64,000 bases of DNA from contig NIVC01000202.1 in NCBI GenBank assembly GCA_002269645.1, positions 434,001 to 498,000 on the forward strand. Reading direction: 5' to 3'. Position 1 is the stretch's first letter. Every line of letters begins with the position of its first letter. Positions 1 through 62,175 of the stretch are shown here, one piece after another. Source of the DNA: Macrostomum lignano. Lineage: Eukaryota. Under the pieces are notes generated by a model. The model searched no databases. It had not been told where the DNA came from and saw nothing but the letters and a program-made list of their open reading frames with translations. Position numbers and translations under genes: made by a program.

Positions 1-229
1 TACCGAAAGAGAAGCATTCAAATTACACAATAATTGAGATAAATAGATAAAAAAGTGAAGTTACAAGCATTACGACAAAATTTTGCGTTTCGATTTCGTT
101 AAATATAATTTATCAAACAAATGCTAACGGTTAAAAATGTTAACATGATTAAAGCATTGATTTGAATATTTTACACTGCTGCACATCGGGAGCTGAGAGG
201 CAAAACCCATGTTGTACACATGTTGTACT

Positions 230-510
230 ACAAAAAGGAATAGGGAGATCTGGAAAGGTGCTACACAGAATCTGGGAGGCTGGAGTCAGACTCGACAGGT
301 GGGATCTAGAAAGGTGGAGACCACATCATTCGGGATCTGGGAAGGGGGAATCACACAAATAGGGATCTGGAAAGGGGAAAGCCTCAAAAAAGGGATTTGA
401 GAGGGGGAAAACCACACAAATAGGAATCTGGGTAGGGGAAAGCCTCAGAAAAAAGGGATTTGAGAAGGGGAAACCACACAACTAGGGATCTGGGAAGGGG
501 AAACCACACG
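230..510. repeat. Imperfect ~60-bp purine-rich tandem repeat
   Basis: Recurring GGGATCTGG(G)AAGGGGAAA...CCACACAAATA units. Confidence 0.7.
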
Positions 511-588
511 TAAGAAACTCGCATGGGATTAGCACCAAGCACGCCCAGAACTATTTCAGATATAGTCAGTAGATCATCATCAGAGCGG

Positions 589-2051
589 CTAAATTCCGTG
601 ATTGCACAGCTGGCAGACCAGCAGCAAGTCCTCCCTAGACAGTGTAATCCGACTCCTGTGCTGGCATAGCCTGTAGGCATCGCTCAAGACCTGTACAACA
701 TAGGCTTCGGCGGCCGTCTGCAGACAGCAAATCGCCAACGCTTGCCAAGTGTCGCCAACGCCCGGCGATACAACCAGCTGACCATTGTGCTTCAAATAGG
801 CCGTGATCTCTTTCACTAGGCGCATAAATGGCAGCTTTCTAATTAGCAGATCAGTTGAAGATTGGAAGTAGCGAATCTGACGCTCCACGTGCTGACGCTT
901 GCGACGATGCTGCTGCTGCGGCTGCTTGGTGTGGGGAGGGTTTCGATTGACGTGAGCTAGCGACAAAAGTGCAGAATGAACTATTGTAGTGGGATTCAAC
1001 TGAACGGACTTGAGCTACATTAAATAGCCATGCTTAAAACATAATAATAATAATAACAATAACTGATGACACCTTGCCTTAATGGCCAGATGTGCAACCG
1101 ACAGCTCAGCCGCAGCTTTTGCGCGGCGTATCTGAAGGCTGCGTACGGCTGTTTAGTCCAAGGACTGGGGGGTCGCCACACACCCTCAATTACCCCAGCT
1201 AATGCTGGCACCCATTTTACAGCTGGGTGAACTGAAGCAATGCAGAGTTAAGTGTCTTGCTCAAGGACACAAATTGTTCCGAGTGGGTCGAAAATCGAAC
1301 CCCCGGCCTTTCAGGCGTGAGTCTGACGCTCTGACCACTAGGCTACAACCCCAACCCCTTAAACCTAAATAGTCCTCCTTTAGCCTAAACGGTCTTCGCA
1401 AACCTAGATAGTTCTCTTAAAACGTATCAGGTACGTTTTAAAAAACGTAAAAGGTAAAAAAGTGTTATGAGAAGCAAAGGGCGCACGCACCTTTCTAGCA
1501 AGCTGCTGACTCTTGCTACCACTAGGCGCTGCCGCAGTTGTCGACTTCTTCGAATGAGACGCAGAAGCAGGAGGATGAGAAGGCCTCCTGGCGGCTCTGG
1601 CTGGCTCATTTTCAGCATTATCGGCAGGCGCTGCAGCCGACAGCGAGTCATCCGAATCCACATCGTTTTCACCAGCCACAGCGGCAGGAGGCTCAGGCGA
1701 GGCGGACACGCGAGGCCTCACAACAGCAGGAGCAGCTGATCGCCTGTACGACTGACGAGCGCCGGATGAAGCGGGCGTTGCTGAAGCTTCAACCCGACGG
1801 GCTACAGGAGACGGGGCAGCAGCGGCAGCAGCGGTAGCCGGCCGATTCCTAACCGCGGCGCGGCCAATTAGGGCTGCAGCAGGTGTGCTAGATAATGGCG
1901 GAGCGAATTGAGCCGGCAGTTGGGCCGGGTCGCGGCTAGCGTTGGCTTTGTCGCCTCCGCCGCTAGTGACAACTACATTAGTTGATTTAGCGTTCAGTGG
2001 TTGCTTCTTGGTAGCTGCTGCTGCCGCTGCTTGAGACTTTTGCCGCCGCAT
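589..2051 (-). CDS. CENPA: Centromeric histone H3 variant (CenH3/CENP-A-like), probably 2 exons
   Basis: The 3' exon (acceptor ttttgtcgctag at 957, exon 956-589) encodes a histone H3 fold: RQIRYFQSSTDLLIRKLPFMRLVKEI...WQALAICCLQTAAEAYVVQVLSDAYRLCQHRSRITLSREDLLL. It has the CenH3 hallmarks Q68->M, F84->W, T107->A (DAY) and about 10 extra loop-1 residues. The upstream ATG-initiated A/S/P/R-rich ORF (from 2051) is the likely N-tail exon. The in-phase donor would be at 1487 (gtgcgc); the stronger-looking donor at 1491 is out of phase, so the join is unresolved. Confidence 0.7.
1084..1352 (-). mobile_element. tRNA-derived CORE-type SINE (copy A), in the CenH3 intron
   Basis: The minus strand reads GGGGTTGTAGCCTAGTGGTCAGAGCG (A box)...GGTTCGATT (B box), then GTGTCCTTGAGCAAGACACTTAACTCT...CAGTTCACCCAGCTGTAAAATGGG, which resembles the MIR CORE. 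Three other copies occur in the window. Confidence 0.8.
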
Positions 2052-2139
2052 AATAGCTTTTATGTTATTTTTGTCAGGTTTGCAGGCTTACAGCATCAAG
2101 ATAAGATGGGTTTGACTTAATAAGGAAGTGGAAAATTAA

Positions 2140-3400
2140 GGACTAAGTGACTAAGTGACTAAGTGACCAAGGATGTGAGGACTTGTGGCGTCGTGCGACC
2201 AGACGCCAGAAGATGGCCCAAGTGCTTAGCAGCCAGAAAGTACCTCTGGTTTAAGTACCAGGAATGGAGGAGGCCTTTAACAAGGTGATCATCGACATTA
2301 GTGAGTCATACTCGAAGACAACAGGCGTACATATTGTCTGTAATTGACTCAGCGACTCGGTTTTCCCGCTCCAAAAAGATCAATGCAGTCTGTGGCCAAA
2401 GCAGCGATCGACTGCTTCACAAGGACTGGCTTCTCAAAAGAGATTCAAAGTGTCAGACACCAACTTCTGGTCCACGATGCTGCAGGCCTTGTACTGATGA
2501 ATTGGAATCGGCACTATACCATCCATCAAGCTAGTAGAACGATTCCAAGGCACACTGAAGACCATGCTGAGAAGGCTGTTGGCACGCAAAAAGAAGTGAT
2601 ACCAGTATCCGCCATATCCACTGTTTGCTATCAGGGAGGTGCCATAAGAACAGCCAGGCAGTTCAAGGACCATTCAATCTGCTGCGTCAGGCCTGGGACA
2701 GACAGTAATAAGTAAGTTACTCACCAAGGTCACCAAGGAGGTCATCAAAAGGACATCATCTCCTTTGTCCTGGCACAGAGAGATTGACTGCATGCAAGAC
2801 TAGACGCAGCAAGCAGGTGGAATGGAAGCACCAGAAACTCTGGTATGACTGGAGATTGTAGGAACAAGAATTGTTGTCTGGCAATCACGTGCTACTGTTA
2901 CTGTCATCATTGTCCAAGAATCTGCATGCCAAATGGCAAGGTCTGTACCAATTGCTAGCAAAGTGCACCAATGGGGTCCAATGTGAACTATTGGATTCAA
3001 ATAGGAAATAGAATTTATGAACATTTTCTATATAAACTTGCTCAAAAAATACAAGCCACAAGAGGCATTCCTGGTGCAGGTGTCAGTGTACTTGCAGGAT
3101 ATTGAGCCAAAGATATCGAACACCTCGATGAGAAATCGACTCAAGCCAACTCAAGCATGTCATAAAGGACTTCATGGGTGTCTTTAGCAAAACCCCTAGC
3201 TGGACCAACCTAGTCTAAACACTTCCAACCAAGTAGTTAAAGATTTGGCAATCCAAGGTATAACAGATAAGTCCTCTAAAATGAAATTCACTGAATGCTA
3301 TCCAGCTTGGAGCAACTAAGATGCCTAACAGTGACTATTGCTTGCAAGTGTACCTATTGGCTAGGGATAGCATGTGCCAATTTTAATCAAATTCAAAATA
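2140..3400 (+). mobile_element. Decayed Gypsy/Ty3 integrase remnant
   Basis: Broken frames give YILSVIDSATRF, YHPSS and a TPF/ELxxG-like region typical of retroviral-type integrases, with many stops and frameshifts. Confidence 0.65.
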
Positions 3401-3573
3401 CTGAATAACAAAAACATAGCATTGATGCTTGGGAGTGCCTATGGCCAAAAGGGCTAAGTTGGTTTTGTTAGAAGGAAACAATAGTTTTTGTTATCCAAGT
3501 TAATAGTTTAGCTAACCCAGCTGTAAATTTCCATTTGGCAATAGTAGATTTTGCCTTGTCTATAGACATAGAC

Positions 3574-3913
3574 CAGGGGTAGGCAAACTTTTTTATCTTA
3601 AGGGCCAGATAGAGAACCTAGAGCATGACTGCAGGCCAGATGAGGGGAGAGAAGAGAGAGGAAAGAGGAGAGAGGAGAGAAGAGAGGAGAGAGGAGAGAA
3701 CAAAGAGGAGATAAGAAAAGAGAAAAAAGAGGTGAGGAGAAAAGGAAGAGAAGAGAAGAGAGAGGAAAAGAAGAGATTAGAGAGAGGAGTGCTTAGAAGA
3801 AATACAGACATTGAGCAGGCCAGATTGCTGTTGTGAAGTTTCAAAGGATCCCAAGGGCCAAATAGGCTTTGCAGGCTATATGTGGCCTATTGGCCAGAGT
3901 TTGCCAACCCTTG
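3574..3913. mobile_element. hAT-type MITE with internal AG-rich tract (CpG-decayed copy)
   Basis: Ends are CAGGGGTAGGCAAAC ... GTTTGCCAACCCTTG, with a degenerate 8-bp flank (ACATAGAC/ATATAGAT). It is homologous to the copy at 53831-54077. Confidence 0.7.
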
Positions 3914-5289
3914 ATATAGATAGATAACCATTGATAAAAGATAACCAAGTTGATCATTTGGCCTGTTGGCCATAGATATTAGCACAAAGAAATATATATA
4001 TGGTAACTAGCAACATTTTATAAATATCATGCTTTAATATCAACTTCCATATAATACAGATCAGAATTATAAATTTGCTTAAATTTCATCTATTTGTCTA
4101 TTATTGTTTCTTTATTTTATTTTAAACTTATAAGTTTTTCTCTATACATTTTTCTTTAAGCATGATATATGATATTGCAAAGTTAAAACTTAGAAAATTT
4201 TTAAAATCCTATTTTTATACAAACTTGCCTTTTGCATATATATTGACAAGTCATAGGATCCCTTTTGAAGTCCCTATCTATAGATCTATTAGAAGATAAG
4301 ATTATTCAATTGGCAAATTAACTAGAAAATGTTTAGTAGCCCATATCTAAAAACTTAAAGCACTTAATTATACAACTTGATGGAATTAAAGGAATTGGCA
4401 ACCTAATATCTTTTTCTTTTCTCTTTACTCTTTTTTTCACCTTTTTTTACCTTTTCATCTATTGTCTACTTCATTTTTTCTTTCTTTATCTTATTCTTAG
4501 CAATTAATTATTTTTAAAAAATTGACAAAAGCCTATGAGACATATAAGAACTTTTACTAAAAACATAAAGCTGCAAAAATACAATAGTTTGCACAATAGG
4601 CTATTTATAGGGGCCTAGTCTTTCAAAAATATCTATCTTATCTTCCTTGATTAGGGTGACTTTATTTAACACTTTGATGTTTATATTTAGGTCTTAAATA
4701 AAGGGCCTTGGTATTTTTTCAAAAATAATGTTTTAACTTTTTTTAAATTAATAAATAAAAGCAAAAATATGCTATGTCTATAGATAGCACTAATGGTTAA
4801 GCCTATGTAGCAGCCATTCTTAAATTGAATGCAAGTTTTCTTTAATTAGCATGCAAAAAGCTATGCCTAAGCCTATACTAGATTCTAGAGTTAGCAATCT
4901 TTTGGTTTCCTGCTCTAAATTATTTAAACCCCTTTTTGAACTTTACAGCTACTGCTAGTATGGCTGGCCAACTTCCAGTGCCACAATCTATTGTCTTTGC
5001 TATTGAAGTCATCAACAGCATTATACTATGTGACCTTGATATGAATCATTGAGGATTGGTTGCGCTAGTACCCAATGTTAACAAAGAAAAATGTGATAGA
5101 TGGCGAGGTACCACCTGCTTGCTAATAACAGGACTTGCGAGAGACATGTGGCATTGCTTTGTCCTGTAGGATTTTTATGTGGTGCCAAGCTTCTCCCATC
5201 AGCATTTTGGCAATATCCTCTATTGGAGATATATATATATGTAGCAACGCAGAGAGTAGCACAGAAAAAAGAGATCTAGCTAGACTTTG

Positions 5290-6495
5290 CGCAGACATGT
5301 TTGCAGAACAACCAAGAGGGCAAGTCATAGCGGACTGGGGGCTGAGCCCAATGGCCTGCAAGTCAGTCAGAGATGTATCATTTAATGTCATAGTTTGGCC
5401 TTGGCCACGACGCAGGCACTTAGTGGGCTAATATAGGAGAGCTAGCACCAGAGGATTTTGCTTGCCCTGGCCATGGCTTCTTAGGCAGCAGCCAAATAAC
5501 ATCTGACGGCGTTTACAGATAGTGCAGCTGAGCGCAGGAACACTAGTGCAAGTCATCAGGTCCCTGGTCAGAACACTATCAGGGTAGTGCATGCCCAGGG
5601 CATAGCAGAGCAGTGACCTGTAGTGGGCATCCAGGGCTTGCTGTTGCATTGCAGTCATTGGCATAGCCTCCATGCCATATAGGAGAATCGGCTCAATGGC
5701 AGTGCGAAAAAAGGCACATCTTTAGGTTGTCATGAGCTGTTGAATTGAAGATGCTCCTGAGCTAGGCCTGAGTCCTATCAGAAACAATGGTGTTGGGGCT
5801 CAAGACAAGGGAGCCAAGGTAGAGGAAATCCTTGCACACCTTGATGACTTCTCTATTTGGAAGAGCTAGCGCAGGGGTAGTTGCAGAGGCCATGTGGAGC
5901 ACCTCAGTCTTGGATGCATTGATCACCAAGCCAACTCGGGTACCCTTGTAGAGTCTAGACAGAGCCCATTGGGCAGCAGCCGGATCGTGACACAGAAGAG
6001 CAATGTTGTCAGCATAGGCTAGAGCAGGCAGCGAGATGGCAGGATATCGGGAGCTTCAGCGTGAGACCAGCACATAGCCATCATCTTCACGCAGGCATTG
6101 GTGAAGAACATAGTCTACTACAACAATGAAGAGTAGTGGAGCCAGCATGTTGCCCTGAAGGACGCCAGAAGTTGTGCTAAATTCTTCAGTGGGGCTGTCG
6201 CTTAACTGAACAAATGCTCTTAAAATGCTGTATAAGTCTATCACAGCAGCTACAAGTTTGGAAGGAATGTCATAGTAGGACAAAATCCACAGAAGTGCAA
6301 GTCTATCAACTGAGTTGAATGCTTTGCGGAAGTCAACAAAATCAATTAAGATAGAATGCTGATATGTCTTATAGGCTTCAATGATACAGCAGATGGTTGC
6401 AACCTGCTCAGTTGTAGACTTGCCTGGTCTGAAACCACTTTGCCAGCTGAGAAGCAGCGGATTCAGCCTAGGCAAGCGGTTGCATAGCACTGCAT
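5290..6495 (-). mobile_element. Decayed non-LTR (RTE-like LINE) reverse transcriptase, 5'-truncated
   Basis: ORF 6056-6490 has QSGFRPGKST, FVDFRKAFNSV and GVLQGNMLAPLLF RT motifs. The downstream frames (5428-5673) resemble a LINE ORF2 C-terminus. Confidence 0.8.
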
Positions 6496-7045
6496 TGTGG
6501 CATGTTTACTAGATAATATATTAGATAATACTGGATAATATACTCTACTATATAATATACTACTACCCTATGTAGAACTCTGTGAGCTTGTTGGATTCTG
6601 AAAAGTTCAAAAAGGGGTTTAATTAATTTAGAGTGGGTAACCAAAGGATTGCCCTTGGACACCCTATAGTCTACTATAGGCCTACATAGCATATAGGCAA
6701 TATAGACATAGGTTAGTGCACATAAATAGGCCTACATATTATTGTTTAGTAAAGAATCATACTGTAACTGAACTATATGACATCTAATTCTAAGGTAGGG
6801 CCTAGGCCAATAGATCATTGAATATACTATAGCCAGTAAGCCAGGCATAGCCTAGGCCCTAGCCTAGGTGAAAGACTTGGTCTTATAGGCAAGTAAAGTA
6901 TTTTATAAGACAGATAATGTGACTAATGAAAACAATATCAATCAATGAAAAGTAAGATGGTTCAGATTAGGCCTAACTAAACCCTAATAAAAAATAAGTT
7001 AGGCCTAGCCCTAATGAGGAAAAATGATTGATTAACTTCAATTTC

Positions 7046-7554
7046 TAGAGCTGTCACGAGATCTCGACGAGACAAGATTCGAGACAAGATCTCGACATTT
7101 TTTCTTGTCTCGAGAAATCTCAAATTTTGTCAAGAAATTCAAGATGAGATTCAAGAATTTTTCTGATACTTTTTTTCAAAAGCTTTTAAGTGATAAGATA
7201 TAAAAAGGGGAGCAAATTTTCATATAAATACAACTGTTTGTTGTAACACACTTGATAGGGCAATTTTCAAATGGTAAAATCTAGCCAATGTTGAGCAGTT
7301 ATTTAACAAAAATAGCAAAAAATTTAAACTAGAATTAAGAAAGTATTCTGGAAAATCTAAAAAATATATTTTAGAATTGTATCTTATCAAGAAATTTAAG
7401 ACAAGATAAAGCAAGATAAGAGCAAGACAAAATGCATTTCTGAAATATATTTTTTAGATTTACTTTGTCTTGTCTCGTCTCGAAATTCTCGACTTATAAG
7501 CCTTTCTCGTCTCGAATCTTGTCTCGAATAAAATCTCTAATTTTGACAGCTCTA
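7046..7554. mobile_element. hAT-like MITE with TIRs and subterminal repeats
   Basis: TIR TAGAGCTGTCA/TGACAGCTCTA, subterminal GAGACAAGATTCGAGAC repeats, and 8-bp flanks TCAATTTC/TCAGTATC (6/8 match). Confidence 0.75.
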
Positions 7555-10500
7555 TCAGTATCAATTTCCACAAAAACATGCCACAAATGAAAAGGCCTAT
7601 GTTCTTCGGACTTAAAAAATGATTTGCCAACCGAATCTTTCTGTTCCAGATCACAAGCAATTTTGACTGAAATAAGCTTTATTGTCACCGCTGTACTGGT
7701 TATAATTTTGAGGTATATTAGGTAAATGGCAATGTGAAGCATTGTCAAATCAACGGGTAATACATCGTTAACACGTGTTTTTTTGTATAAGCATACTTCT
7801 AGATGCATTGTTTTGTTTTAAGCTTTTCAAAGAAACTGAAATATCTTAAATTCTTTTGTTAAACCATAAACGAAACTACTTATATGCCTCTTGTTTTACT
7901 TCCTTTCATGCGCGCTATTATAAAAAAATCTTTCGCGAAAATGTCGTCACTTGTAGCAAAAACAGTAAATTACTTATTAATACTTCAAATTATCAAATTA
8001 TCCATCCAATTAAGTCAAACTTCGTGTGATCACGAACAACTTTTATATCAATTTTGATTTCTTTTTAAATTTTTACATTCATTGTATTGTAAGGATTTTA
8101 ATTTCTAATATTATAGAAATTTTATTACAGAATTTAATTTCTTATATTATCTAATATAATATTTAGATTTTTAGATTTTAATTTGGACATTTGTACATTA
8201 TATATGGTTTAATTCTATAATACAATTTTTAATTAAAAATGAAATCAAAAGATTTTTTGTATATTATAAAATAAAGTAGGCCTATTTTAGACTTTAGTAT
8301 TTAATCTAATAATTATATAATATAAACTAGGCCTAGGCCCTAGCTATCATTGTCTTAACATCAAGAAGGCCTGGGTATAGCCTTTGAAATTTAAATAACT
8401 TTAGCCAATTGGTTTTTACTGATGCCAAATCAATGCTAAAATGAACTATAGTTAATATACTCATACTTAGGTGCAACCTTGGGATTCACTTGGCTGTTTC
8501 TATTGGCAACCCACACATGTAAGTCACTATTAGACAGAATAGTAGTCACGTGACTGTCTTAGCAAATAGCAACTTACATGTACATGTGTTGCCAATAGAA
8601 ATGACCAGGTGATTCCTAAAGTTGCACATATATGGATATACTGCTATATATAACAAACTCAGCAAATGACATGGCTATCCTGCAGAATTGTTTGTTACAC
8701 TTACTCATTACTATATACATTTTTTATCTATGAAGTGTTTTGGCATTAAAATTCAGTTGTGGGGGTTGCAACTGTCGGTACATGACCAAGATGGCCACAC
8801 ACCAAGATGGCCACAGCTTTAAGTGTCTAAATAGATAATAATAAGCCTAGGTCTATATATTTCACTTATTTCCTATTGGTAATAATTAGAGAAATAGATA
8901 CTAAAAGATGCTATATTGGAATTGTATTATATTAGGCCCTTATATTATAGTCATTCTTTTGGCTTTAGCTTTTATTATAGCTTGACTTATATATATTTAT
9001 TCACTATATCAAGCAAGTAGTCTAACACAAAATAAATACCTTGCCTTGTATATTTATCTTAATTTTTGTATAGCATTACTAGTAGCAATGGTTTCTCAAT
9101 AAACAGATATGATAGATTTGATAGATGTAATGATAAGGAATAAATTGGCATAAAAACTAAAAAAGATTATTTAGTTTCAAATCTATTATTGCATTAGTAT
9201 TTATAAATATGATTGATTAAACATAATAAAAATAACAATAGCTACTATGTTACTAATTAATGATAAAAAGAGAGGAAAGCCAAAGAGACTCAATGTTGTG
9301 GCCATCTTGGTCTTATACCCAACTGTCAAAAGTGTGATTGCTCTCACTGAAATTATCCTACCGCTGAGTCACCAAAGTTGTGCTAGGGGTAAACTTCTAT
9401 CCCTATAAATAATTCCACAGCTGTCACTAAAGTTGTCAAAGGGCTTAACTTTTGTCTATATATTAAATGTTTTAATGTTGGTAGCTGCTATTTAGCCCTT
9501 ATAAGTATTGTTTTCCTGTTATTCCAGTAGCGTTTACTATTATTCTGGTAGCGTTTATTGTTATTTTGGACTGAGTGGTATATTGGCTTACTGGTATGTA
9601 TATTGCATATACTTCTAATCCTGGGCGTTACTGAGATCAGAGGATCATAGTCTCTGGTTATTCTTATATGTATCAATTTAGGATCTACTTTGTATTCTCT
9701 TACTACTTCCACTTCTCAGTAGTATATACTGTATGTGTTCTCTGCCACTTCACTTCTCTTCTGCAAATGAATAACTTGGAAAACAATCTTCAATAATGTT
9801 TACTTGGAACTCTTACTATCCACTATTAACTGTCTTGTTATCAAACTGCAATGCGCAAGGTTGGTCTCTCCTCCACTGAAAATGCTTCTATTTATACTTT
9901 AATTTTTATTGCTAGTTTAAACAAATATTAGTTTGCATAAAATATTATAAAAAATATGTGTATTATAACAATTGTGTTTTCCTAGATTTGGCACGCATTC
10001 AAAATAAGTTATATGATTATCAATTTTATAAAAGAATCAGGAAGGCCCTGCACACAACTTAACTTTTATTGCAATTTCCAGGTTTTTCAAAATTTTAGTA
10101 TGCAATTTTGAATTTATGTGCTGATGTCATTGGCAAATAAATGTCTTTGAATTCTGATACAAAGTCTAGGGCTTTAAAGAGAGAGGGTTTTGTTTAAAAT
10201 TTTTTGCTAAGCTACAAATATTGCAAATAAAGTGCTTTCTACTTAAAAATGACTAGTGGTCAACTTTCTTCCCTAACATGGATTGTGCCACTAAGAGGTT
10301 TGCCCAGCCCTTGAACTAACAAATATTTTAATGCCAAAACACTTCTAAAATTTTGGCAAAATTTAAGATATAGCTGATTATCTAAGTTTGTTATAATTAT
10401 ATTTATATTAAATACCATTGTATTCAATGCTATTGAAAAATATCTATATCTTTTGTTTAAAATAACTACATATAATATTTATTGAATTTTTCCTTTAGTA

Positions 10501-11153: not shown

Positions 11154-12443
11154 ATGGCCATGTCCTCCACTGGTGTTCTGTTTGCGCCACCCAACTATTT
11201 TCGCGCCCAGCGCGTTGAAATTGCTGCCGCCTACTCTGGCTTTAAACTGACCAAGGCCAAGTATGAGCCAGGCAAAACCGATAGCACCCTGGTCAAGAAG
11301 GGCTTCCCAGCTGGCTGCCTGCCAGCTTTCGAGTCTGGCAAGGAACAACTATTCGAAGCCAACGCCATTGCCCAGTTTGTTGCCAACGAGCAACTGCGAG
11401 GCGGCTCTGGCAATTCGGCCAACGTTGCCCAGTTCGCCAACTGGAGCGACGCCACCTTCGTGCCGCCCATGACCGCCTGGGTGCTGCCCTGCCTTGGTGT
11501 TACCAGGCCCGACGCTGGCCAGATCGAGGCCGCCAAGGCCCAGGTAGCAGCCGGTTTGAAGTTTCTGGACTCTTATCTGGCCACTCGAACCTACCTGGTT
11601 GGCGAGCGAATCACCCTCGCCGATGTGGCTGTAGCCTGCGATCTGTTGCCGCTGTTCCAGCACGCCATGGGCCCAGAGCAGCGCCGGCCATACGCCAACG
11701 TCTCTCGCTGGTTTAACACCCTGGTTAACCAGCCGGAATTCAAGCGAATCCTAGGCGAGGTGAAGCTGGCCGATAAAGCTGGCGAATTCAGCCAGGCTCG
11801 CTACGATCAGCTGCGGCAACAGTCGGGCGGCAAGAAAGACGACAAGAAGCAGGCTAAGAAGGAAGAGCCGAAGAAGAAGGAAGCGGCGCCTAAGAAGGAG
11901 GAGCCAAAGAAGGAGGCTACAGCTACCGCTGCCGACGAGAGTGAGAAGAAGAAGGAGGATAAAGATCCTTTTGCCAAGCTCCCAGTCGGCACCTTCAACA
12001 TGGACGAGTTCAAGCGCGTGTACTCCAACCAGGACATTAAGACCGTTGCCATACCATACTTCTGGCAGAACTTCGATCCCGAGCACTACAGTCTGTGGTA
12101 CTGCGAATATCTCTATCCGGAAGACCTGCGCCTCCTATTCATGTCCAGCAATCTGATTGGCGGCATGTTCCAGCGCCTGGAAAGGATGCACAAGCACGCG
12201 TTCGGTTCCATGGTTGTGTTTGGCGAGAATAACAAGAGCACAATTAGTGGTCTCTGGTTCTGGCGCGGCCAGGGTCTGGCTTTTGAGCTTAGCGAAGATC
12301 TACAGGTGGATTATGAGAGCTACTCGTGGCGCAAGCTGGATCCTAAATCCGATGAGGCTAAGAAATTGGTTGAGGCCTACTTCCTGCATGATGAGGGCGA
12401 CTTCGGTGACAAGAAGTTTGCTAGGGGCAAGATCTTCAAATAA
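11154..12443 (+). CDS. EEF1G: Elongation factor 1-gamma (eEF1B-gamma), intronless, 429 aa
   Basis: GST-like N-terminal domain (LFEANAIAQFVANEQLRG, TYLVGERITLADVAVAC), K/E-rich linker, and EF1G C-terminal domain (FNMDEFKRVYSN, FWQNFDPEHYSLWYCEY, NLIGGMFQRL, ISGLWFWRGQGLAFELSEDLQVDYESY). AATAAA at 12557-12562. The start could be the second Met (11160). Confidence 0.96.
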   Translation: MAMSSTGVLFAPPNYFRAQRVEIAAAYSGFKLTKAKYEPGKTDSTLVKKGFPAGCLPAFESGKEQLFEANAIAQFVANEQLRGGSGNSANVAQFANWSDATFVPPMTAWVLPCLGVTRPDAGQIEAAKAQVAAGLKFLDSYLATRTYLVGERITLADVAVACDLLPLFQHAMGPEQRRPYANVSRWFNTLVNQPEFKRILGEVKLADKAGEFSQARYDQLRQQSGGKKDDKKQAKKEEPKKKEAAPKKEEPKKEATATAADESEKKKEDKDPFAKLPVGTFNMDEFKRVYSNQDIKTVAIPYFWQNFDPEHYSLWYCEYLYPEDLRLLFMSSNLIGGMFQRLERMHKHAFGSMVVFGENNKSTISGLWFWRGQGLAFELSEDLQVDYESYSWRKLDPKSDEAKKLVEAYFLHDEGDFGDKKFARGKIFK

Positions 12444-14189: not shown

Positions 14190-17100
14190 ATGGACTATCG
14201 CTCGGTGCTAACCGGCATAGTCCTGGGCCTGATTTCGCTGGGTACAGTGTTCGGCAACTGTCTGGTGCTGCTGGCCGTGGCGCTGCATCGAAACCTTCGC
14301 TCAACAACCGGGGTATTTGTGTCCAATCTCGCCGCAGCCGACCTCCTGCTCGGTGCTTGCGTGTTGCCATTCAGCTCGGCTCTAGAGGTCACCGGTGGTT
14401 GCTGGCATTTTGGCAACATCCTCTGCGACATCTGGGCATCGGTTGACGTGCTCTGCTGCACTGCAAGCATCATGTCTTTATGTGTCATCTCCATGGAGAG
14501 GTACATCGGCGTGACCCGACCACTGCAGCACGCTAGCATCTTGACCCACCGTAGGGCAGTGCTTGTGGTCCTCTTTGTTTGGTTGCTCTCCTTGCTGGTC
14601 TCCGTTGGGCCACTAATTGGTTGGAAGAAACCACGAAACGGCACCGAAGATCCTTACAAATGCGAAGTGTCCGACAACACTGCCTACATTGCCTTCTCCG
14701 TGACGTTTTCTTTCTATTTACCGCTGTGCGTCATAATCTTCTTCTACATCCGCGTCTACCAAGAGGCTGTCAAGCAGACACGCTTCTTGACCTCCGGAGT
14801 AAAGACCGCGCGAACTTCTGGTCCAGCCTCTGCGGGAGCTTTTGTCCAGCGACATCTCACAACGGCGGCAGCCGATGGCTCAAATTCAAAAAATTCATCG
14901 GCAGTTGTGCTGCGCGTACACAGAGGCGGCGGTGGCAATCTAATGGCCAACTCCAAACAGCCGAAACTGCAGCTGACTGGTAAGTGAAGGGGTTTCTGAG
15001 GACGTAAATTTTTGCGTGTTTTTCAACAGTACATAGGCACGCACTTATACGATTATAGAAAGTAGTGTCTCGATATGAAGTGACATTTATAGAGTGACTT
15101 TTTCGACATTGCTGGGATCACGAAGCAGGCACGAAAATTAGATTATTTCGATACAGTAGTTGATAATTTGTAGTGTCTTTTTAGAAGCATTCAGACCTCT
15201 TGTTTCCTTCAGCTCGTACTAGCTCCAATTTACCTTGTTGTAACTGTTATTTAGTATATATAATGTGGTAGGATTGTTTATGACTTATGAGACCAGACGA
15301 TAGTGATGACTTATGAGACCAAACGACACGAAAGGAAATTCAATTAAAACTTGCGCTTTGTATTTAGCTTGTGAGATGGTGCCTTTTCTCCAATAGGCAT
15401 GTTGGCGGTAGGCTCCTGCAGCATCATCAGATAATGCTACTTCAGAAGGCGTGCGTAAGTCAACCGTCAATCCACCCGCACAGGCTTATGTAGCAACTAG
15501 CAAGTTAGCGGCAAGTCATCTGGTGCTTCTCTAGCTCACAGGTTAAGGGCGTGAATTTGAGGATTTTCCCGGCTCGAGCAAGGTGGCATTGCGATATCCT
15601 ATTGCGTTTCAAAATCCCCGTCGAGCTGTGAGATTTGCGATCCGATTGGCATCTCTAATTTCTGGATTTCTGTTTTTCTCCTCCGTTATTGATTGAATAT
15701 CCCGATGCAAAGAAAGAGTGAGGAAATAAATTTGTCGCAGTCGGTGACGCTACTCCCTTTGTAACGGCGAGACGAATCTGTTTTCAATAGCCGCGCGCAC
15801 GGTGCCAACTGGCGTCGGAATATAATTCCCTCCATCAAGAGGCTGACGTGCCTGCATCTATTAGAGCCCGGCTGAAATCCAAGCCAAGCCAAGAGCGAGG
15901 AAGTCAGTCAGGAGCAGGAGATCATTTGCGGAAGCAGCGAGGAATCAGGAAGTTGGAAAATGTTCGGCGCAAAGCTTTAGTTAGTCAGTCGCCTCTCATT
16001 CCTCCTGTGCAGCTCCTATTCTTCATCATTCTCTCCTAGCATCTGTCAAGGCGGCTTTTGGTTGTTTTTAAATTCCACGCGAGTGTGTGGAGAGAAACCA
16101 ATAAGGACAACAAGAGCCAGGGGATGAATTTGATATTTATAAGATCCTCATTGCGCGCGTTTGTCTCTCGGGCGGATGTTTTCGGCCTCTGTTGCGCATG
16201 TCAGGAAGGAGAGACGACAAACGCGACTATCAGATATCTGCAAAATTTGGATTGCTTTGAATTAATAAGAAGAAGCCAACTAATTTTCAGGAACCAACAG
16301 TGACATTCCGTTTTACTGAGGAAATTTTCGTGAATTTTTGCAAAGAACAGCATTCACGAGGCCAGTAAATATAGGCAGTTCTATTTTTACCATATTTTGT
16401 CTAATCTATAGGCATCTCTTTAATGCCCTTCGTGTTAGCCGAAAGATAAGAATTTTTCGCGCGTTCAATTCCATTTTTCCCCACGTCTGACTGAGGATTG
16501 CCGCGGAGTGAAAAAAACCAGTTGTAAAACTGCTTGCCCGCCAGGCGGGGAAGCGCATTGCTTCCCTGAAGGAAAGCAAGTCTATTTGCGCACGGCTGAG
16601 CTAAAGCAAATTTAAGTCGTGACTCGCCATTCCTTTCCAATTCCTTGCTGCTACGCTATCCCCTGCCGGCCGAAGCCGTTAATTCTTAATCCAAGTCCTA
16701 CACGACGCGTTGGCTGGGCCGCAGTTGTCGGTCTCTAAGACACCGGGAGGGAGGCCCAGCAGAGCCAGCAGCAGTAGCGGCAGCACAAACACTGGGCTGG
16801 GCTTCCATGCGTGGCCAGACCAGCCAAGCGGCTAAGTCAAATAACAAGTGTTCCGATCTGAAAGCCGGCAAATAACTGCATCTCCTACCAATGCAGATAA
16901 GCTATTGCTTGCTTAGCACCGCGTCGGCCGAGAGTCTTACGAGTAATTGCAGTTCGTTGTTAGCTTTACTACTAGCTCGTAGAATAACAACTTGCAAGCG
17001 ACGCTTGAAGCAACGCCTCTGGTGGGCGAAATTTTTGGATTGTGCATTCAAGTATTTGTATAATAATTCCCGGATGTCATGCAGCTTATTTCTGGTTTTT

Positions 17101-20100
17101 TAATAGTGCCTTTAGCAGCTTCTGTGTTTACCAGCACATTGTCTAAGGTACATCACTGGTTGGAAAAGTGAAGCGGGAATGCGCTCTCAGTTTCCATATC
17201 TTATCCTGGATACTTTACTCATCCTGCTGTCTCGATCAGCTTCACTTCCCCTCTCGGCCTGTTTGCTCAGGCAGACAGGACTGCATGGCTGCTTGGCTAC
17301 TTGGCAGAATGCGCTGTGCGCGCGAATTCCGAACAAACACGGTCTACACAATACAGCTTCATGCAGCTGCTGAGTTGGAGCGCGCACTCGTTCGACATAG
17401 ACCATTTTTTGCGAAGAATTTCTCTAAAATAAAATGCAATTTAATTTCCATCTCTGTCCAAAAAGCAAATTGTATTTAAAGCGCTTCTCACTCTTGAACT
17501 CATCAAGCGATGTAGAACAGACAATAGGCAGCTCCATTTGAATGATTTTTTAAACAATATTTTAGAGCTATTTAAAAATTGCTGATGGATTCTGGAAAAA
17601 CGCGATCAGAACGGGTCAGGGCAACCTTCAAATAATGTGACTGTTGCTGGGACCAAGTATTAACTGTATATCAGAGGCTAAATGCTTAGTCCCTACTAAC
17701 TTAATATTCTGTGTCCCAATGCTGATGAAGTCATTGCGAAGAACATACCGGAGTTATCACACTGAGAGAGTTCCAACACGTGCGGATGATAGCTATAGAT
17801 ATAGATTCATATGATACTTTCTTATGCAATCCGCCTGACCCGGATCTGCCCCAAAGGATCAAGATGAGGCCAAAAATATACCCAGAAAGAAATCAATTCT
17901 GTACAAGCTCCCATTGAGGCTTAGGCTATTTATATAGAAGCTTTGAGCTTGGAGATTACAAAGAAGGCGTCGTGCCACCTGGGGCTATATGGTATTAGTC
18001 AGCACAGAAGCAGCACTTTGATGGACAGTTTCATGCAGCTGACGGACAGCTATGAAAATAATCAGGATCCTTTGTTGTGATAGTCCAGATCCGTAGCTAG
18101 ATAGAGCCGGTAGACGTTTCTGTAGTTTACCCTCCCAGAGCAACAGGTTGCTACAGGTTAAATAGAAGCTTCATCGATAATGACGACCTCCACTGTGCGC
18201 AGGCCGTGGGGATCAGCGTGCACTCTTTGGCGAAAAAGCGAATCTGCAAGTTCGCCTTAAAGATCAGTCTCTGTCGCTACTGAGAGAGCAGGAAGCGGAA
18301 GTCGCCGTAGGACAAGTTGGCCAGAAAGACTCGCGAGAGATTGCTTTCTCACATGCTGAGCACGGATCTCAAATCCGATCGTTTCATAAACCCCACAGCA
18401 AAAAGGGGAAGAGGGATCTTGGGGCCAACTGTCAAAAAGCAGCGCTTAAAGTATGAAAAAGTCGTATAAGTTAAAAGAGGAGAACTTCATTCTCTTCTTA
18501 CGATCATAGCTCGTACACTGACTGGTTTCACTCTCTCCTCAGTCTTTGAGAGTACATGTCAGCAGTGGTATTGCGCTAGTGCAGTTCGCAGTACACATTT
18601 TTTCTGCTGGAATCCGGCACAAAATAAATATGGAGCCGCGGAATGCAAAAAACTCACTAGAAAACTGATTCCTAGAAACCACTCCGACCTTTTTATAATT
18701 TATCTTTCCTTCTCTCAAGCGCTTCTTCTGTACAACTAACCGTACGAGACTTTTTCGGTGCTCAAGCCAGCCAAATAAATATTTGTAGTTTGTAGTGAGT
18801 TCATCTCAACGAAGCTTAGTATCTTAATGAGTAGCCGTTGTACATATAGTCTCAGTTGAGCACAGGCTGACTCAATCAGTAGGAAAGCACGGGCCACAAA
18901 AATGAACTCAATTCAACAAGCCAACCGAGCGCTCTGCTTTTTCCTCCATTCTACACTACATGCCGGAGGCTCAGAGAGCGCACTTTTACTGGCTTTTTTA
19001 AATTAAGGGTCCCGTACAATTTTCTTAATGCCTCGCTCGTGGCAGCCCAAAATAGTCATCTTTTATCTGTCCTGCCCTTTATCAATCAGTGGTTTGTGTT
19101 TTACTCTCTGACGATAATCGGATCTAACTGTCTTTGAAGCCCCGCCCAAATGTGTCTCCAGCAGCTTCTACCTCTGCCTCCTTTCTTGCCTCTACCCTGC
19201 CTCCCTCCCTTGCCTACTCCTCCCCTACCCTGTGCCCTGCCTCCCTATCCCTTGTCTACTCCTCCCCTACCCTGTCCCCTGCCTCCCTATCCCTTGCCTA
19301 CTCCTCCCCTACCCTGTCCCCTGCCTCCCTCCCTTGCCTACTCCTCCCCTACCCTGTGCCCTGCCTCCCTATCCCTTGCCTACTCCTCCCCTACCCTGTC
19401 CCCTGCCTCCCTATCCCTTGCCTACTCCTCCCCTACCCTGTCCCCTGCCTCCCTATCCCTTGCCTACTCCTCCCCTACCCTGTGCCCTGCCTCCCTTTCC
19501 CTTGCCTACTCCTCCCCTACCCTGTCCCCTGCCTCCCTATCCCTTGCCTACTCCTCCCCTACCCTGTCCCCTGCCTCCCTATCCCTTGCCTACTCCTCCC
19601 CTACCCTGTGCCCTGCCTCCCTTTCCCTTGCCTACTCCTCCCCTACCCTGTCCCCTGCCTCCCTATCCCTTGCCTACTCCTCCCCTACCCTGTGCCCTGC
19701 CTCCCTTTCCCTTGCCTACTCCTTCCCTACCCTGTCCCCTGCCTCCCTTTCCCTTGCCTACTCCTCCCCTACCCTGTCCCCTGCCTCCCTATCCCTTGCC
19801 TACTCCTCCCCTACCCTGTGCCCTGCCTCCCTTTCCCTTGCCTACTCCTCCCCTACCCTGTCCCCTGCCTCCCTATCCCTTGCCTACTCCTCCCCTACCC
19901 TGTCCCCTGCCTCCCTATCCCTTGCCTACTCCTCCCCTACCCTGTCCCCTGCCTCCCTATCCCTTGCCTACTCCTCCCCTACCCTGTGCCCTGCCTCCCT
20001 TTCCCTTGCCTACTCCTCCCCTACCCTGTCCCCTGCCTCCCTATCCCTTGCCTACTCCTCCCCTACCCTGTCCCCTGCCTCCTTATCCCTTGCCTACTCC

Positions 20101-23100
20101 TCCCCTACCCTGTACCCTGCCTCCCTATCCCTTGCCTACTCCTCCCCTACCCTGTCCCCTGCCTCCCCACAATGCTACTCCTACTTCACTCCGCCAGTAA
20201 CTAACCCATTGTACATGCAACTGCAAACTGTTTTTATTTCAACTGCAAATTTACTCATTCAATCGCAACCATAACTAACTCTAATTCACTGCAGCAGCGC
20301 AAAACAAGACCGAACAAGGTAAGCAACACCACTAAGTCAGTGGTTACTCCAAGTCAAGCAGTCCAAGTTTTTGATGCATGCTATGTTTTTGTTGTGAATA
20401 CTATAAAATTGCAGCCATTTGACTAACCTATACCGAGTCCAACTCGTATTTCGAATTGCCAACCATGGCGAGTGATAGGAAGAATTAAGCAATGCGGTAT
20501 AATAATAATCATTTATAGCTCCTACAAATGAGAACTCGTTTTGCGGCTGAAAAGCGTAGAGAATTTTGGAAGGTTGCTTCGTATAGGCTCAAGTTTTTTC
20601 AAGTCTTCACAATACTCCACGGCAAAGGACATTGCAGTTCAGCTCTAAACTGTTTTGATACTTCTCTCAGCGAATTTATGTAGATATTTTAACAATAGAC
20701 GAATTTCCAAGTACTAATGTTGTAGAAAACAACCTACAGTGAGGAAGACCTATAGCACCAGATTACGTCTGAATGCCTAAATTTGTTGTTTAAATGTTGT
20801 GACACTGAAAATAGTTTCCTCCGTAGCTTGCACTATTCTCTGCACTACTTGCTAGATTAGATTAACATAGGTCATGCACTCCATTTTGCTGAGATATCCC
20901 GCGCGTAGATCTGTCTGCCTTGATTGAATAATTCTCATTAAGTTATACCTGAACCCAATCTAGCAACTTATGATCGAATTATTCGCATATTCTGATGTAA
21001 AGCTTTAGCAACTGAAATTACACGTGTAAAGTATTGCAGTAGTTCTTAGCTGTAAGTGTCGTTCTGTCGATCTCTAAGTGCCGCTAAAATTCAATGTGTA
21101 CTTTCGCTGGGTACCTGCATAGTGTTCTGAGTCTGCAAATGCACTCGGACCCGTTCTGTAGAACCCCACCTTGCCTATAGTAATTTCCTCAACGCCCGCG
21201 ACCCTAAATCATTATTTTTTCGTCCTATAAGTTTTATAGTTGGCTGCTCAGAGCTGCGAAACGTTGATACTGCGGGGGTGACAAAGAAATTCTCTGGAGA
21301 CATAGGAGTCAGGGCTTATTAGCGCTGTCAGCCATAAAAGCAGCAAGAACTACGAGCAAGCCATGCATTTTGCCGTCGGCGAAATCTCGAGGTGAACTTA
21401 ATTAAACAAGCTTTATTATTTATTCAGATATAGTTTCCAGCCCCTTGGACGAAGTCTTGGGGGTTCGGGGAGATTGAAAAATCCTTTCTAAATCCATTTC
21501 CCTTAGCCTACTTCCTAAATTCCTTAGCGGTTGCACTTTCAAATGAAACTCTCGAATGTCGAATCCATCTTCGGGACAAGATAGCAGTGGCATGCTCAAT
21601 CCCATTGCGCCATCACTGATCCCAACCCTCTTGCAGATGAAAGAGAGCGCTGATATGGATTAAAAAGTTCAGGGCGAGTTTAAGTTCTGAGGTTCCTTGC
21701 CCTCCTTTTCCTTCCTTATCAAATTTGATGAAGCTGTCATCCTACGACAAGGCTTGCGGCACATATTTCTTTATTTTTTATCAAGCCTAGCCTCAAGCGA
21801 GCTCAGAGGATTTCTGCGAGTTGAGGGTTATGTAATTCAAATGGCTTTAGGGTGATTTCAATGTTTAATTTTACCTTTTACTGGAGAGTAACACCGTTTT
21901 GCCGTGTGCAGTGTGTACTAGTCAGGGAGATGTAGGATACTTCCAATACAGCTACCGCTGTTTCTATGAGTATATTTGTACTGTTATTTAAGTACCAATC
22001 GTAGTGTCCGAAAGAGCCGAACAACAAGCTGATAGCTTATTGATTGAAGAATTCCTCACATACTGCATCTATCAGACAACTAAACTGCTCTTCAAGAAAG
22101 AGCCAATAATTTGGTTATAATCCTAACGAATCCCACTGATCTGGATTCAAGTATATTTGTAATAGAAAAGTTGCAAGCAGGTCACTCTTAAATAATTATT
22201 GTAGATACAATTCCATTTCAATGCATATTAGTTTCTGCGTATCAATACACACATACACAGTTAGCACACATAGCTATATAAAATATAAAAAAGTAACATG
22301 CTGTGCTTGCATGCTATCTTCACTGCACCAGATCAAATGCAATCATTGATTATGTAATGAAAAATGGCCTTCAAAAAATGATACGATCTTTGAGTTTTAG
22401 GTCCTTGGCTCGATTGTCGCCTTGGTGTGCAACAGTGCCCACAGTTCCCTGCAAACTATAAATGCCGCTTACCTTTATTGAATATTTTTAATTACGTGGG
22501 AGGGCACTTGTACTTTTATTAAGCATCTAGCTTGACTGTATATGCGGCTGCTATAGAGTGCCAAGATAACCCTGGGCTTGTATAGCATTAGTTTTCTACT
22601 CATTTTGTACTAAATCAGTGTCCCGATCTAGCGATATGGAGGCTGCCGCAGTCGAAGTGCGCATGTCGTATAAGATTTGTCCACATCCGCTAGGCGCAAG
22701 TGGACTCCAGTGTCAAGACGGCTGCAATTATGATGGCTAGGCTGCGAGGCAGGTAAACAGAGGGAAGAGATAGTTGGGCATCGAGGAAGCTGGTAGATGG
22801 TTGGAAAGCCGGAAGTACTGAAGAGGGATGAGGTTCTTCATCAGTCAGACGTTAAGTAAGTATTGCGATTGTCTGCTCGGGTCTCAGTAGTGCAACAGAA
22901 ATAAAAAACGGGCAATCTACTTCTACCATTGCGGAATGGTACTCGTCATCCTTTCGTAAATTTTTTATTTATTTATAATAGACAGTCAATTGCTCTCAAT
23001 GAGCTTGGCTGAAAAATGATGATGGTTCTATGTATGCATCACAGTCACTTCAAGTGCGAGTATAGTCTCCGTTGAGTGGATTTGAATATCTCTTTCTTTT

Positions 23101-33833: not shown

Positions 33834-34689
33834 CTTCAATGCAGAAAAAGCAGCAGAAGCGCTTTGAACTCGAAAGCTTGAGATGTCGAATTCGACTGAC
33901 GACAAAAGTTTTCTGCAAAGTCGGTCTTCTCTCTGCGGATGAAAAACGTAACTCGATAGCCAGAAGCTCTATTTTTTCGGTTTCATTTATAGACAAGTAC
34001 CAGCTTGAACCGCTGGGTTGCTTGAGGCTGATAATTTTCTATATACTAAAAATAAATGTGCCCATAATTCTTGTTTGCGAGCCTCTTAGCTGCTGAGCTG
34101 CAGCCATAGACAGTTCTGTACAAAGCGATTCCTGTCTCTCTAGCAGCGTCAGAGGGCCTACGATTGTCTATGCCAAAACACCAACCATACGGGTATGCGG
34201 AGCCGTGCACTTTTTTGCAATGCAAGGGAAACCCAATTTAATTGGGTTCAAGGAAATTCACTTTAACAGTCTGAATTACCCCATGTATATCCGCAAATCA
34301 AACGGTATTTAAGGCAAATATGGCCAAAATGCTTTGCCCCAGCAGTAACCGGGCCTCCAACCCCGTTTTTGCGCAACAATGCAACAAGCGCAACCACAGC
34401 GGCCATTATTGAATAGAGTTATAATTTTAACACTGAGACCCTATTATAAGTGTTTCGCTGCAGAAGTGTTTTGCACAGTTTGCTTTAGTAACCAAGTGAC
34501 CAAGTCTGCATTTTCAATGATGAAACAACGCGCCTGAAGTACCCATGCAAGCGAGTGACAAATTAGTCTTTAGATGGAGAAGACATGCGGCTAATGCATA
34601 TTATACAAGAACCTAATTATTTGGAGCGTTGCGGGTCGCGGTGATGCAGCAGGATTCGCCCGGCCGGTTTAAGCTTCAGCTGGAGGTAG

Positions 34690-51834: not shown

Positions 51835-62175
<10,341 letters not shown>

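What the first reader, a model, noticed from the sequence alone, without database searches (positions are those of the whole stretch)
589..2051. CenH3/CENP-A candidate with ~10-residue loop-1 insertion and very long N-tail
Seen: an H3 fold with M at H3-Q68, W at F84, DAY at T107, and a loop 1 of TAYLKHNGQLVVSPGVGDT (19 aa versus 9 in H3). Established: these substitutions and a longer loop 1 distinguish CenH3 from H3. Inference: this is the centromeric histone, with a ~190-aa low-complexity tail. Loop 1 is unusually long and the C-terminal half is Cys-rich (ICC, LCQH, VCQLC).
Basis: partly seen in the sequence, partly recalled or inferred. Interest (0 to 1): 0.7.

Follow-up and report, generated by a model that had tools for sequence, protein, structure and literature searches.

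The report
Flatworm centromeric histone H3 gene
This is the two-exon gene for the centromere-type histone H3 (CenH3/CENP-A) of the flatworm Macrostomum lignano. It is a real, expressed gene already listed as a CENPA homologue in a published table, with a long loop 1, an unusual cysteine pattern and an older diverged second copy that nobody has described.

Summary
A minus-strand gene lies at 589-2051: exon 1 2051-1491, a GT..AG intron 1490-922 carrying a SINE, and exon 2 921-589. It encodes a 297-aa protein with a ~199-aa Ala/Ser/Pro/Arg-rich tail and an H3-type histone fold.

The spliced product with donor 1491 and acceptor 921 is letter-for-letter NCBI PAA88081.1 of Macrostomum lignano. That shows which junction the deposited annotation uses.

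The fold matches human CENP-A (3e-18), Cnp1 and Cse4 better than any ordinary H3 (about 1e-13). It carries M68, W84 and A107-Y108. Loop 1 is 10 residues longer than in H3. No H3 tail motifs or histone 3' stem-loop are present.

A published table already lists this transcript cluster as trans-spliced, enriched in S/G2/M cells, depleted by irradiation ("Neoblast, stringent"), with best human hit CENPA. The CenH3 reading is therefore well supported but not new. Centromere localisation remains untested.

Three points appear unreported:
- Five Cys in the fold, including VCQLC in place of the near-universal ARRIR in alpha3.
- A +10 loop 1, which is long but not unique among CenH3s.
- A second, old paralogue at a contig end (71% identity, dN/dS 0.18). 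It keeps the loop length and four Cys positions but has three 1-base insertions.

The parts
1491..2051 (-). Exon 1 (CDS): ATG at 2051, 187 codons encoding the Ala/Ser/Pro/Arg-rich N-terminal tail, ending ...QQLARK before donor AAG|GTGCGT
   Evidence: The spliced product is an exact match to NCBI PAA88081.1.
922..1490 (-). Intron, 569 nt, GT..AG, phase 0
   Evidence: It is about 6-fold more diverged between the two genomic copies than the exons (12 substitutions plus 25 gap columns against 3 substitutions and 0 indels; Fisher p=0.002).
1051..1352 (-). tRNA-derived SINE inside the intron, in the same orientation as the gene
   Evidence: blastn finds copies at window 61611-61913 (90%), 38784-39023 (87%) and 56831-57086 (85%). 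The last begins with an Rfam tRNA hit at 56831-56900.
589..921 (-). Exon 2 (CDS, residues 188-297 plus stop TAG at 591-589): alphaN, alpha1, loop 1, alpha2, loop 2, alpha3 of an H3-type histone fold
   Evidence: Pfam PF00125 6.4e-22. PDB best hits are CENP-A at 3e-18. AlphaFold model pLDDT 80.9. Foldseek top 13 hits are CENP-A, CATD-chimera, Cse4 and Cnp1 chains.
748..804 (-). Loop-1 segment T227-T245 (TAYLKHNGQLVVSPGVGDT), 10 residues longer than in H3 and 8 longer than in human CENP-A
   Evidence: Its length and the flanks LKHNGQL / PGVG[DE]TWQ are conserved in paralogue B.
592..615 (-). End of alpha3 and C-terminus, VCQLCNHGI (C290, C293), where nearly all relatives have ARRIRG
   Evidence: Motif census: ARRIR 133, ARRLR 22, VCQLC only in this gene. 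Conserved in paralogue B.
301..509 (.). 30-bp minisatellite (6.8 copies) about 80 nt 3' of the stop, probably within the 3' UTR. Copy number differs in the second genomic copy.
   Evidence: The published transcript length of 2266 nt implies long UTRs.

Best explanation
This is the CenH3 (CENP-A orthologue) gene of the free-living flatworm Macrostomum lignano.

Shown here:
- The window is contig NIVC01000202.1 of assembly GCA_002269645.1.
- The gene has two exons, and its spliced product is the annotated 297-aa protein PAA88081.1.
- The histone fold is of the H3 type and is closer to CENP-A, Cnp1 and Cse4 than to H3.
- A near-identical second genomic copy keeps the reading frame and splice sites while the intron drifts.
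- The transcript is trans-spliced and enriched in cycling (S/G2/M, irradiation-sensitive) cells.

Inferred from what is established for CenH3 in other eukaryotes:
- The protein replaces H3 in nucleosomes at centromeres.
- Its divergent loop 1 plus alpha2 (the CATD-equivalent region) is read by a dedicated chaperone and by inner-kinetochore proteins.
- The long basic, disordered tail serves kinetochore or regulatory contacts.
- The nucleosome it forms marks where the kinetochore assembles in neoblast and germline divisions.
For: - Exact match of the spliced product to PAA88081.1 [Macrostomum lignano]. A sister copy, PAA78451.1, differs by one residue.
- L002 positions 1-8051 equal window 8051-1 at 100%.
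- Pfam Histone, E=6.4e-22.
- PDB ranking: human CENP-A 3e-18, then Cnp1 4e-17, then Cse4 about 2e-14, then H3 about 1e-13.
- Seven CENP-A-only shared positions against one H3-only.
- The tree places it outside the H3/H3.3 cluster.
- Foldseek top hits are centromeric nucleosome chains.
- No ARTKQTARKS-type tail motifs (direct reading). No histone 3' stem-loop anywhere in the window at Rfam gathering score. An intron is present.
- Exons are conserved about 6-fold better than the intron between the two copies, p=0.002.
- PMC5816591, supplementary table 2: cluster MligTCv3c-11146.0 (Mlig008829.g8, Mlig000639.g2, Mlig028392.g1) is TRANSSPLICED and classed 'Neoblast, stringent'. logFC G1 to G2/M is +1.0 to +2.5; logFC after irradiation is -0.57 to -0.93 (FDR down to 5e-7). 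The best human hit is CENPA at 1e-14, the reciprocal fly hit is cid, and the planarian counterpart is typed 'Neoblast'.
Against: - No localisation, ChIP or loss-of-function data exist (literature searches found none).
- Deep nodes of the tree have bootstrap below 50, and the grouping with Drosophila CID (60%) is probably long-branch attraction.
- The alpha3 RRIRG motif, which human CENP-A retains, is replaced by CQLCN, and the fold is less basic (pI 8.7 against 9.9). Some contacts may therefore differ.
- I could not scan the rest of the M. lignano genome for a more conventional CenH3.
- Enrichment in cycling cells would also be expected of many other histone variants.
Confidence: 0.86

Rival explanations
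1. It is a lineage-specific, non-centromeric H3 variant, for instance a stem-cell- or germline-chromatin variant with a long tail. On this reading it only resembles CenH3 because both have escaped the constraints on canonical H3.
For: - CenH3-like substitutions can arise in any fast-evolving H3 variant.
- Tree support for deep nodes is weak.
- The alpha3 arginines kept by most CenH3s are lost.
- The expression pattern (cycling cells) is not specific to CenH3.
Against: - The specific residues shared with human CENP-A and not with H3 (W84, A86, A96, A107, Y108, L110, L119).
- The consistent ranking of three independently named CenH3s above every ordinary H3 in the PDB.
- The fly reciprocal best hit is cid.
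- M. lignano chromosomes are monocentric (own knowledge), so a CenH3 is expected, and no other candidate turned up among the closest relatives retrieved.
Confidence: 0.1
2. It is a non-functional relic or an annotation artefact: two unrelated ORFs joined by a gene predictor.
For: - The intron holds a SINE.
- The gene is flanked by transposon debris and minisatellites.
- One old database version (P0123, 346 aa) has a frame-shifted C-terminus.
Against: - Two genomic copies keep intact frames and splice sites, with 3 exonic substitutions against 12 substitutions plus 25 gap columns in the intron.
- An old paralogue shows dN/dS of 0.18.
- A trans-spliced transcript with regulated expression is on record.
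- The window's frame gives a proper alpha3 ending exactly at H3 position 135.
Confidence: 0.03

Closest known systems
Human CENP-A (PDB 3AN2, 3NQU, 6SE0 and others)
   Same: - Best sequence match in the PDB (3e-18) and among the best fold matches.
- Shares W84, A86, A96, A107-Y108, L110 and L119.
- The alphaN region lacks the RYRPGT motif.
- Loop 1 is longer than in H3, and the N-tail is unrelated to H3.
   Different: - Loop 1 is 8 residues longer than in human CENP-A.
- The tail is about 199 aa against about 40.
- Alpha3 reads VCQLCNHGI instead of ARRIRGLEEGLG, so there are no alpha3 arginines and no LEEGLG-type tail.
- It has five Cys, whereas human CENP-A has one (own knowledge of the human sequence).
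Drosophila CID, and the Cid1-5 paralogues of Drosophila (own knowledge of the literature: Kursel and Malik)
   Same: - The published table names cid as the reciprocal best fly hit.
- It is the nearest neighbour in the NJ tree (60% bootstrap).
- It has a long, rapidly evolving N-tail and a lengthened loop 1.
- Old CenH3 duplicates exist within one genome.
   Different: - The tree grouping is probably long-branch attraction.
- The Macrostomum paralogue B is known only as a truncated, possibly frame-shifted copy, and no tissue specialisation has been shown.
Fungal-type CenH3s with long loop 1 (for example hits P0140, P0153, P0165, ending RIRGVWGG[IM]G), and S. cerevisiae Cse4
   Same: Loop 1 is also 10 residues longer than in H3, and several have N-tails of 100 residues or more. 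This shows that a +10 loop 1 and a long tail lie within the known range of CenH3.
   Different: Their loop sequences are unrelated. They keep ARRIRG and have 1-2 Cys.
Canonical H3 / H3.3
   Same: The same fold. The alpha1 start (LLIRKLPF.RLV.EI) and the AEAY core of alpha2 are kept. The protein ends at the same position as H3 residue 135.
   Different: - It has none of the H3 tail, and Q68, F84, T107-N108 and C110 are all changed.
- Loop 1 is 10 residues longer.
- The gene has an intron and no 3' stem-loop.
- PDB scores are about 15 bits lower than to CENP-A.

Membership tests
CenH3 / CENP-A | H3-type histone fold | tested here: met
   Pfam PF00125 6.4e-22. All 175 PDB matches are H3-family chains. 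AlphaFold gives alphaN-alpha1-L1-alpha2-L2-alpha3. Foldseek hits are H3/CENP-A chains.
CenH3 / CENP-A | N-terminal tail unrelated to the invariant H3 tail | tested here: met
   Direct reading: the tail begins MRRQKSQAAAAAATKK and runs about 199 aa, Ala/Ser/Pro/Arg-rich, with no ARTKQTARKS, K9, K27 or K36 contexts.
CenH3 / CENP-A | Loop 1 longer than in H3 | tested here: met
   +10 residues. The model shows a 14-residue coil plus a roughly one-turn extension of alpha1.
CenH3 / CENP-A | Replacement of H3-invariant Q68, F84 and T107 (diagnostic positions of Malik and Henikoff; own knowledge) | tested here: met
   M68, W84, A107.
CenH3 / CENP-A | Closer to named CenH3s than to H3/H3.3 in sequence comparison or phylogeny | tested here: met
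   PDB ranking. In the NJ tree it falls outside the H3/H3.3 cluster, but deep bootstrap values are weak.
CenH3 / CENP-A | Not a replication-dependent cluster histone (introns, no 3' stem-loop) | tested here: met
   One intron. No Rfam Histone3 hit in the 64 kb. No other histone genes in the window.
CenH3 / CENP-A | Expressed in dividing cells | tested here: met
   From the literature rather than my own data: PMC5816591 supplementary table 2, class 'Neoblast, stringent', enriched in G2/M, depleted by irradiation.
CenH3 / CENP-A | Localises to centromeres and is required for kinetochore assembly | not testable with these tools
   No published localisation or knock-down was found.
CenH3 / CENP-A | Recognised by a CenH3 chaperone and by CENP-C / CENP-N through the CATD, loop 1 and the C-terminal tail | not testable with these tools
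   The partners were not looked for. The C-terminus (NHGI) and alpha3 (VCQLC) differ from the vertebrate motifs.

The most novel reading that the evidence does not exclude
Macrostomum lignano may maintain two anciently separated CenH3 lineages.

- Lineage A is this gene, present in 2-3 near-identical homeologous copies.
- Lineage B lies at the end of contig NIVC01002819.1 (annotated fragment BOX15_Mlig003845g2).

B is 71% identical to A, with dS about 1.4 and dN/dS of 0.18. It keeps the exact +10 loop-1 length and four Cys positions (H3-equivalent 91, 111, 128, 131).

If B's three single-base insertions are PacBio errors at a contig end (two sit in CC and GGGG runs), this would be a case of specialised CenH3 paralogues, for example soma/neoblast versus germline, in a flatworm known for hidden polyploidy and karyotype instability.

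Separately, the conserved Cys set that replaces the alpha3 arginines could make the centromeric nucleosome sensitive to redox state or metals. That is pure inference.
Probability: 0.2. Interest if true: 0.55.

Novelty: new member of a known kind. Interest (0 to 1): 0.3.

Why it matters
M. lignano is the flatworm model in which transgenesis works, and its karyotype is unstable, with hidden polyploidy. A validated CenH3 would be the obvious handle for mapping its centromeres by tagging, ChIP or CUT&Tag. No flatworm centromere has yet been defined with CenH3; the tapeworm genome paper (PMC7653826) says explicitly that this validation is missing.

The gene's identity is not a discovery, because automated annotation already points to CENPA. 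The loop-1 insertion, the cysteine pattern replacing RRIRG, and the diverged paralogue are modest new details of interest to people working on CenH3 evolution.

Tried and rejected
- Six splice combinations were tested by exact look-up: donors 1491 and 1487 with acceptors giving exon 2 from 1008, 999, 980, 956, 924 and 921. Only 1491/921 exists as a deposited protein.
- The word-indexed protein search with the fold alone returned only distant H3-family proteins (41-50% identity) and missed even the gene's own cluster.
- With the full protein, that search returned only its own cluster.
- With an A+B alignment of the lineage-specific part, it returned only the B fragment.
- No orthologue from another species could therefore be retrieved. 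The planarian and schistosome counterparts named in the published table (dd_Smed_v6_13844_0_1, Smp_040020.1) could not be fetched by name, so I could not test whether the loop-1 insert is shared across flatworms.
- Looking up names for ten of the best hits from the searches gave only two labels: an Argonauta 'H3.3-like' protein that looks like CENP-A, and a frog CENP-A.
- ARAGORN found no tRNA in the window, although the SINE heads are tRNA-derived; Rfam calls one.
- No AATAAA or ATTAAA occurs within 1.7 kb 3' of the stop, so the poly(A) site is not located.
- The idea that 'LCQH' preserves H3 C110 was rejected: the Cys aligns to position 111.

Full report
**What is in the sequence**

On the minus strand, an ATG at 2051 is preceded by in-frame stops. 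It opens 187 codons of an Ala/Ser/Pro/Arg-rich sequence that ends at a good donor, AAG|GTGCGT, so exon 1 ends at 1491. About 570 bases further on, an ORF ending in TAG at 591-589 encodes an unmistakable H3-type histone fold.

I built six possible splice products and looked each up by exact sequence. Only donor 1491 joined to the acceptor AG at 923-922 (exon 2 from 921) is on record. It is NCBI PAA88081.1 / UniRef A0A1I8HJ49, 'hypothetical protein BOX15_Mlig028392g1 [Macrostomum lignano]', 297 aa. The DNA around that protein in assembly GCA_002269645.1 (contig NIVC01000202.1) is 100% identical to window 1-8051. The window is therefore M. lignano, a free-living flatworm. This shows which donor the deposited annotation uses; I did not examine split reads myself.

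- Pfam Histone scores 6.4e-22.
- Against H3, the protein has M at Q68, W at F84 and A-Y at T107-N108.
- There are 19 residues (T227-T245, window 804-748) between the conserved E-I and W-Q, against 9 in H3 and 11 in human CENP-A.
- An AlphaFold2 model built on 121 sequences (pLDDT 80.9) gives alphaN, alpha1 (about one turn longer than in H3), a 14-residue coil, alpha2 and alpha3.
- The tail before alphaN is 199 aa, 25% Ala, pI 11.7.
- The fold holds five Cys at H3-equivalent positions 90, 91, 111, 128 and 131.

One detail needs correcting. The Cys of 'LCQH' is at position 111, not the H3 C110. Position 110 is Leu, as in human CENP-A.

**Is it a CenH3?**

- *PDB ranking.* All human CENP-A chains (3e-18, 69.5 bits), S. 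pombe Cnp1 (4e-17) and yeast Cse4 (about 2e-14) rank above ordinary H3/H3.3 (about 1e-13 or weaker).
- *Shared residues.* From W84 to the end, seven positions are shared only with human CENP-A and one only with H3.
- *Tree.* A neighbour-joining tree of 34 histone folds puts this protein and its paralogue together (bootstrap 100). They sit on a long branch among CenH3-type sequences, outside the tight H3/H3.3 cluster. Deeper nodes have weak support, and the pairing with fly CID (60%) is probably long-branch attraction.
The human CENP-A stretch agrees with the alignment printed.
- *Fold search.* The 13 best Foldseek matches are CENP-A, CATD-chimera, Cse4 or Cnp1 chains, but the margin over H3 is small.
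- *Gene type.* The gene has an intron, and the window holds no histone 3' stem-loop at Rfam's gathering score.

**Is it a live gene?**

A second genomic copy lies on contig NIVC01000689.1 (protein PAA78451.1). It is collinear over more than 10 kb at 94-99% identity. Between the two copies the exons differ by 3 substitutions in 894 nt and no indels (one A79V change). The intron differs by 12 substitutions and 25 gap columns (Fisher p=0.002 for substitutions). The SINE in the intron is shared by both copies.

**What the literature says**

No paper in the library discusses a Macrostomum CenH3. However, supplementary table 2 of Grudniewska et al. 2018 (PMC5816591) lists transcript cluster MligTCv3c-11146.0, made of Mlig008829.g8, Mlig000639.g2 and Mlig028392.g1. 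Its entry reads:

- TRANSSPLICED, with a transcript length of 2266 nt.
- Member of the classes 'Irradiation', 'S/G2/M' and 'Neoblast, stringent'.
- logFC G1 to G2/M of +1.0, +2.4 and +2.5.
- logFC after irradiation of -0.61, -0.57 and -0.93, with FDR down to 5e-7.
- Best human hit CENPA (1e-14), reciprocal fly hit cid, and planarian and schistosome counterparts named.

The CENPA homology and the cycling-cell expression are thus already on record by automated annotation.

**How unusual are the special features?**

About 24 have 36 or more, and the longest is 42. These include fungal-type CenH3s with exactly +10. The insert is therefore long but within the known range.

The cysteines are more unusual. 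The modal count in about 228 folds is 1. Five is the maximum apart from P0123, a frame-shifted prediction of the same gene. The alpha3 motif VCQLC is unique, against ARRIR (133) and ARRLR (22). The fold is correspondingly less basic, with pI 8.7 against 9.9.

**A second, old paralogue**

The exhaustive HMMER search found a 66-aa M. lignano fragment, P0141 (BOX15_Mlig003845g2). It is 67% identical over the loop-1-to-alpha2 part. It sits in the last 436 bases of contig NIVC01002819.1.

Read across three single-base insertions, the copy runs from HRR to a stop after CQLCRV. It is 71% identical in protein and 68% in DNA, with dN 0.26, dS 1.43 and dN/dS 0.18. It keeps the following:

- The same loop-1 length (GQLPAAPGVGET against GQLVVSPGVGDT).
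- The motifs LQTAAEAY and SDAY.
- Cys at positions 91, 111, 128 and 131.

Whatever the loop and the cysteines do, they have been kept over a long time. All three frame disruptions are +1 insertions. Two of them sit in CC and GGGG runs, and all lie at a contig end of a PacBio-based assembly. I therefore cannot say whether B is a recent pseudogene or an assembly error. Its 5' part lies beyond the contig end.

**Mechanism**

The gene, its splice form, its family resemblance, its conservation and its expression class are shown. The following is inferred from what is established for CenH3 elsewhere:

- The protein replaces H3 in centromeric nucleosomes.
- The divergent loop 1 and alpha2 serve as the recognition surface for a dedicated chaperone and inner-kinetochore proteins.
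- The long disordered basic tail provides further contacts.

What the Cys pattern does is unknown. A redox or metal role is speculation.

**Verdict**

This is an uncharacterised member of a well-known family whose homology was already flagged in a published table. Interest is modest, at 0.3. It comes mainly from the gene's usefulness as a centromere marker in a transgenic flatworm model, and from the possibly duplicated, Cys-rich CenH3 lineage.

Noticed in passing
L003 1-436 (end of contig NIVC01002819.1 of GCA_002269645.1; not in the window): A diverged second CenH3-like copy. It is 71% identical in protein, with dN/dS 0.18 and dS about 1.4. It has three +1 single-base insertions and is cut off by the contig end. 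A roughly 33-bp tandem array follows directly on its 3' side.
   Followed up: partly
L001 6001-7486 (contig NIVC01000689.1), and a third locus named only in the literature (Mlig008829.g8): Near-identical homeologous or allelic copies of the gene (1 aa difference), which fits the hidden polyploidy of M. lignano. An older database version (P0123, 346 aa) carries a frame-shifted C-terminus that reads into window ORF 384-680.
   Followed up: partly
window 11154-12443 (+): An uninterrupted 429-aa elongation factor 1-gamma ORF (Pfam EF1G 1.5e-45 plus GST_N/GST_C). This exact product is not in the protein collection. It may be an intronless gene or a processed copy.
   Followed up: partly
window 14190-14987 and 27764-28276 (+): Two ORFs of one rhodopsin-family GPCR that looks aminergic (7tm_1 1.2e-50; TM7 NPVIY motif in the second ORF). 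They are separated by about 12.8 kb of repeat-rich sequence.
   Followed up: partly
window 33198-33905 (-), 37759-38307 (-), 49056-49916 (+): Three copies of an ORF that starts with the same signal-peptide-like segment (MSVRWLLLLSCLAAALLCSEA...). Each runs into the 10-bp minisatellite GGCTGGAGAG, which translates as SPALSSPLQP repeats. There is no Pfam match.
   Followed up: no
window 1051-1352, 38784-39023, 56831-57086, 61611-61913: A family of tRNA-derived SINEs at 85-90% identity. One copy lies inside the CenH3 intron and is shared with the homeologue. Only the copy at 56831-56900 reaches Rfam's tRNA threshold, and ARAGORN calls none.
   Followed up: partly
window 46407-47342 (+), 6056-6490 (-), 2163-3200 (+): Retroelement debris: a gag-like ORF (PNMA, zf-CCHC), a reverse-transcriptase fragment (RVT_1 1e-11), and unclassified short ORFs just upstream of the CenH3 start.
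   Followed up: partly
window 19195-20167, 52113-52975, 55126-55629, 58989-59499, 60849-61418, 62688-63238, 63712-64000: Unusually dense mini- and microsatellites, for example 42 bp x 23 copies at 96% identity, 33 bp x 15 and (ACAG)x128. They produce many spurious long ORFs.
   Followed up: no
window 55820-56599 (-): An ORF containing [15 protein letters not shown], which resembles the start of an ADAM-type disintegrin domain. It runs into a 14-bp minisatellite, and Pfam gave no hit at E below 0.001.
   Followed up: no
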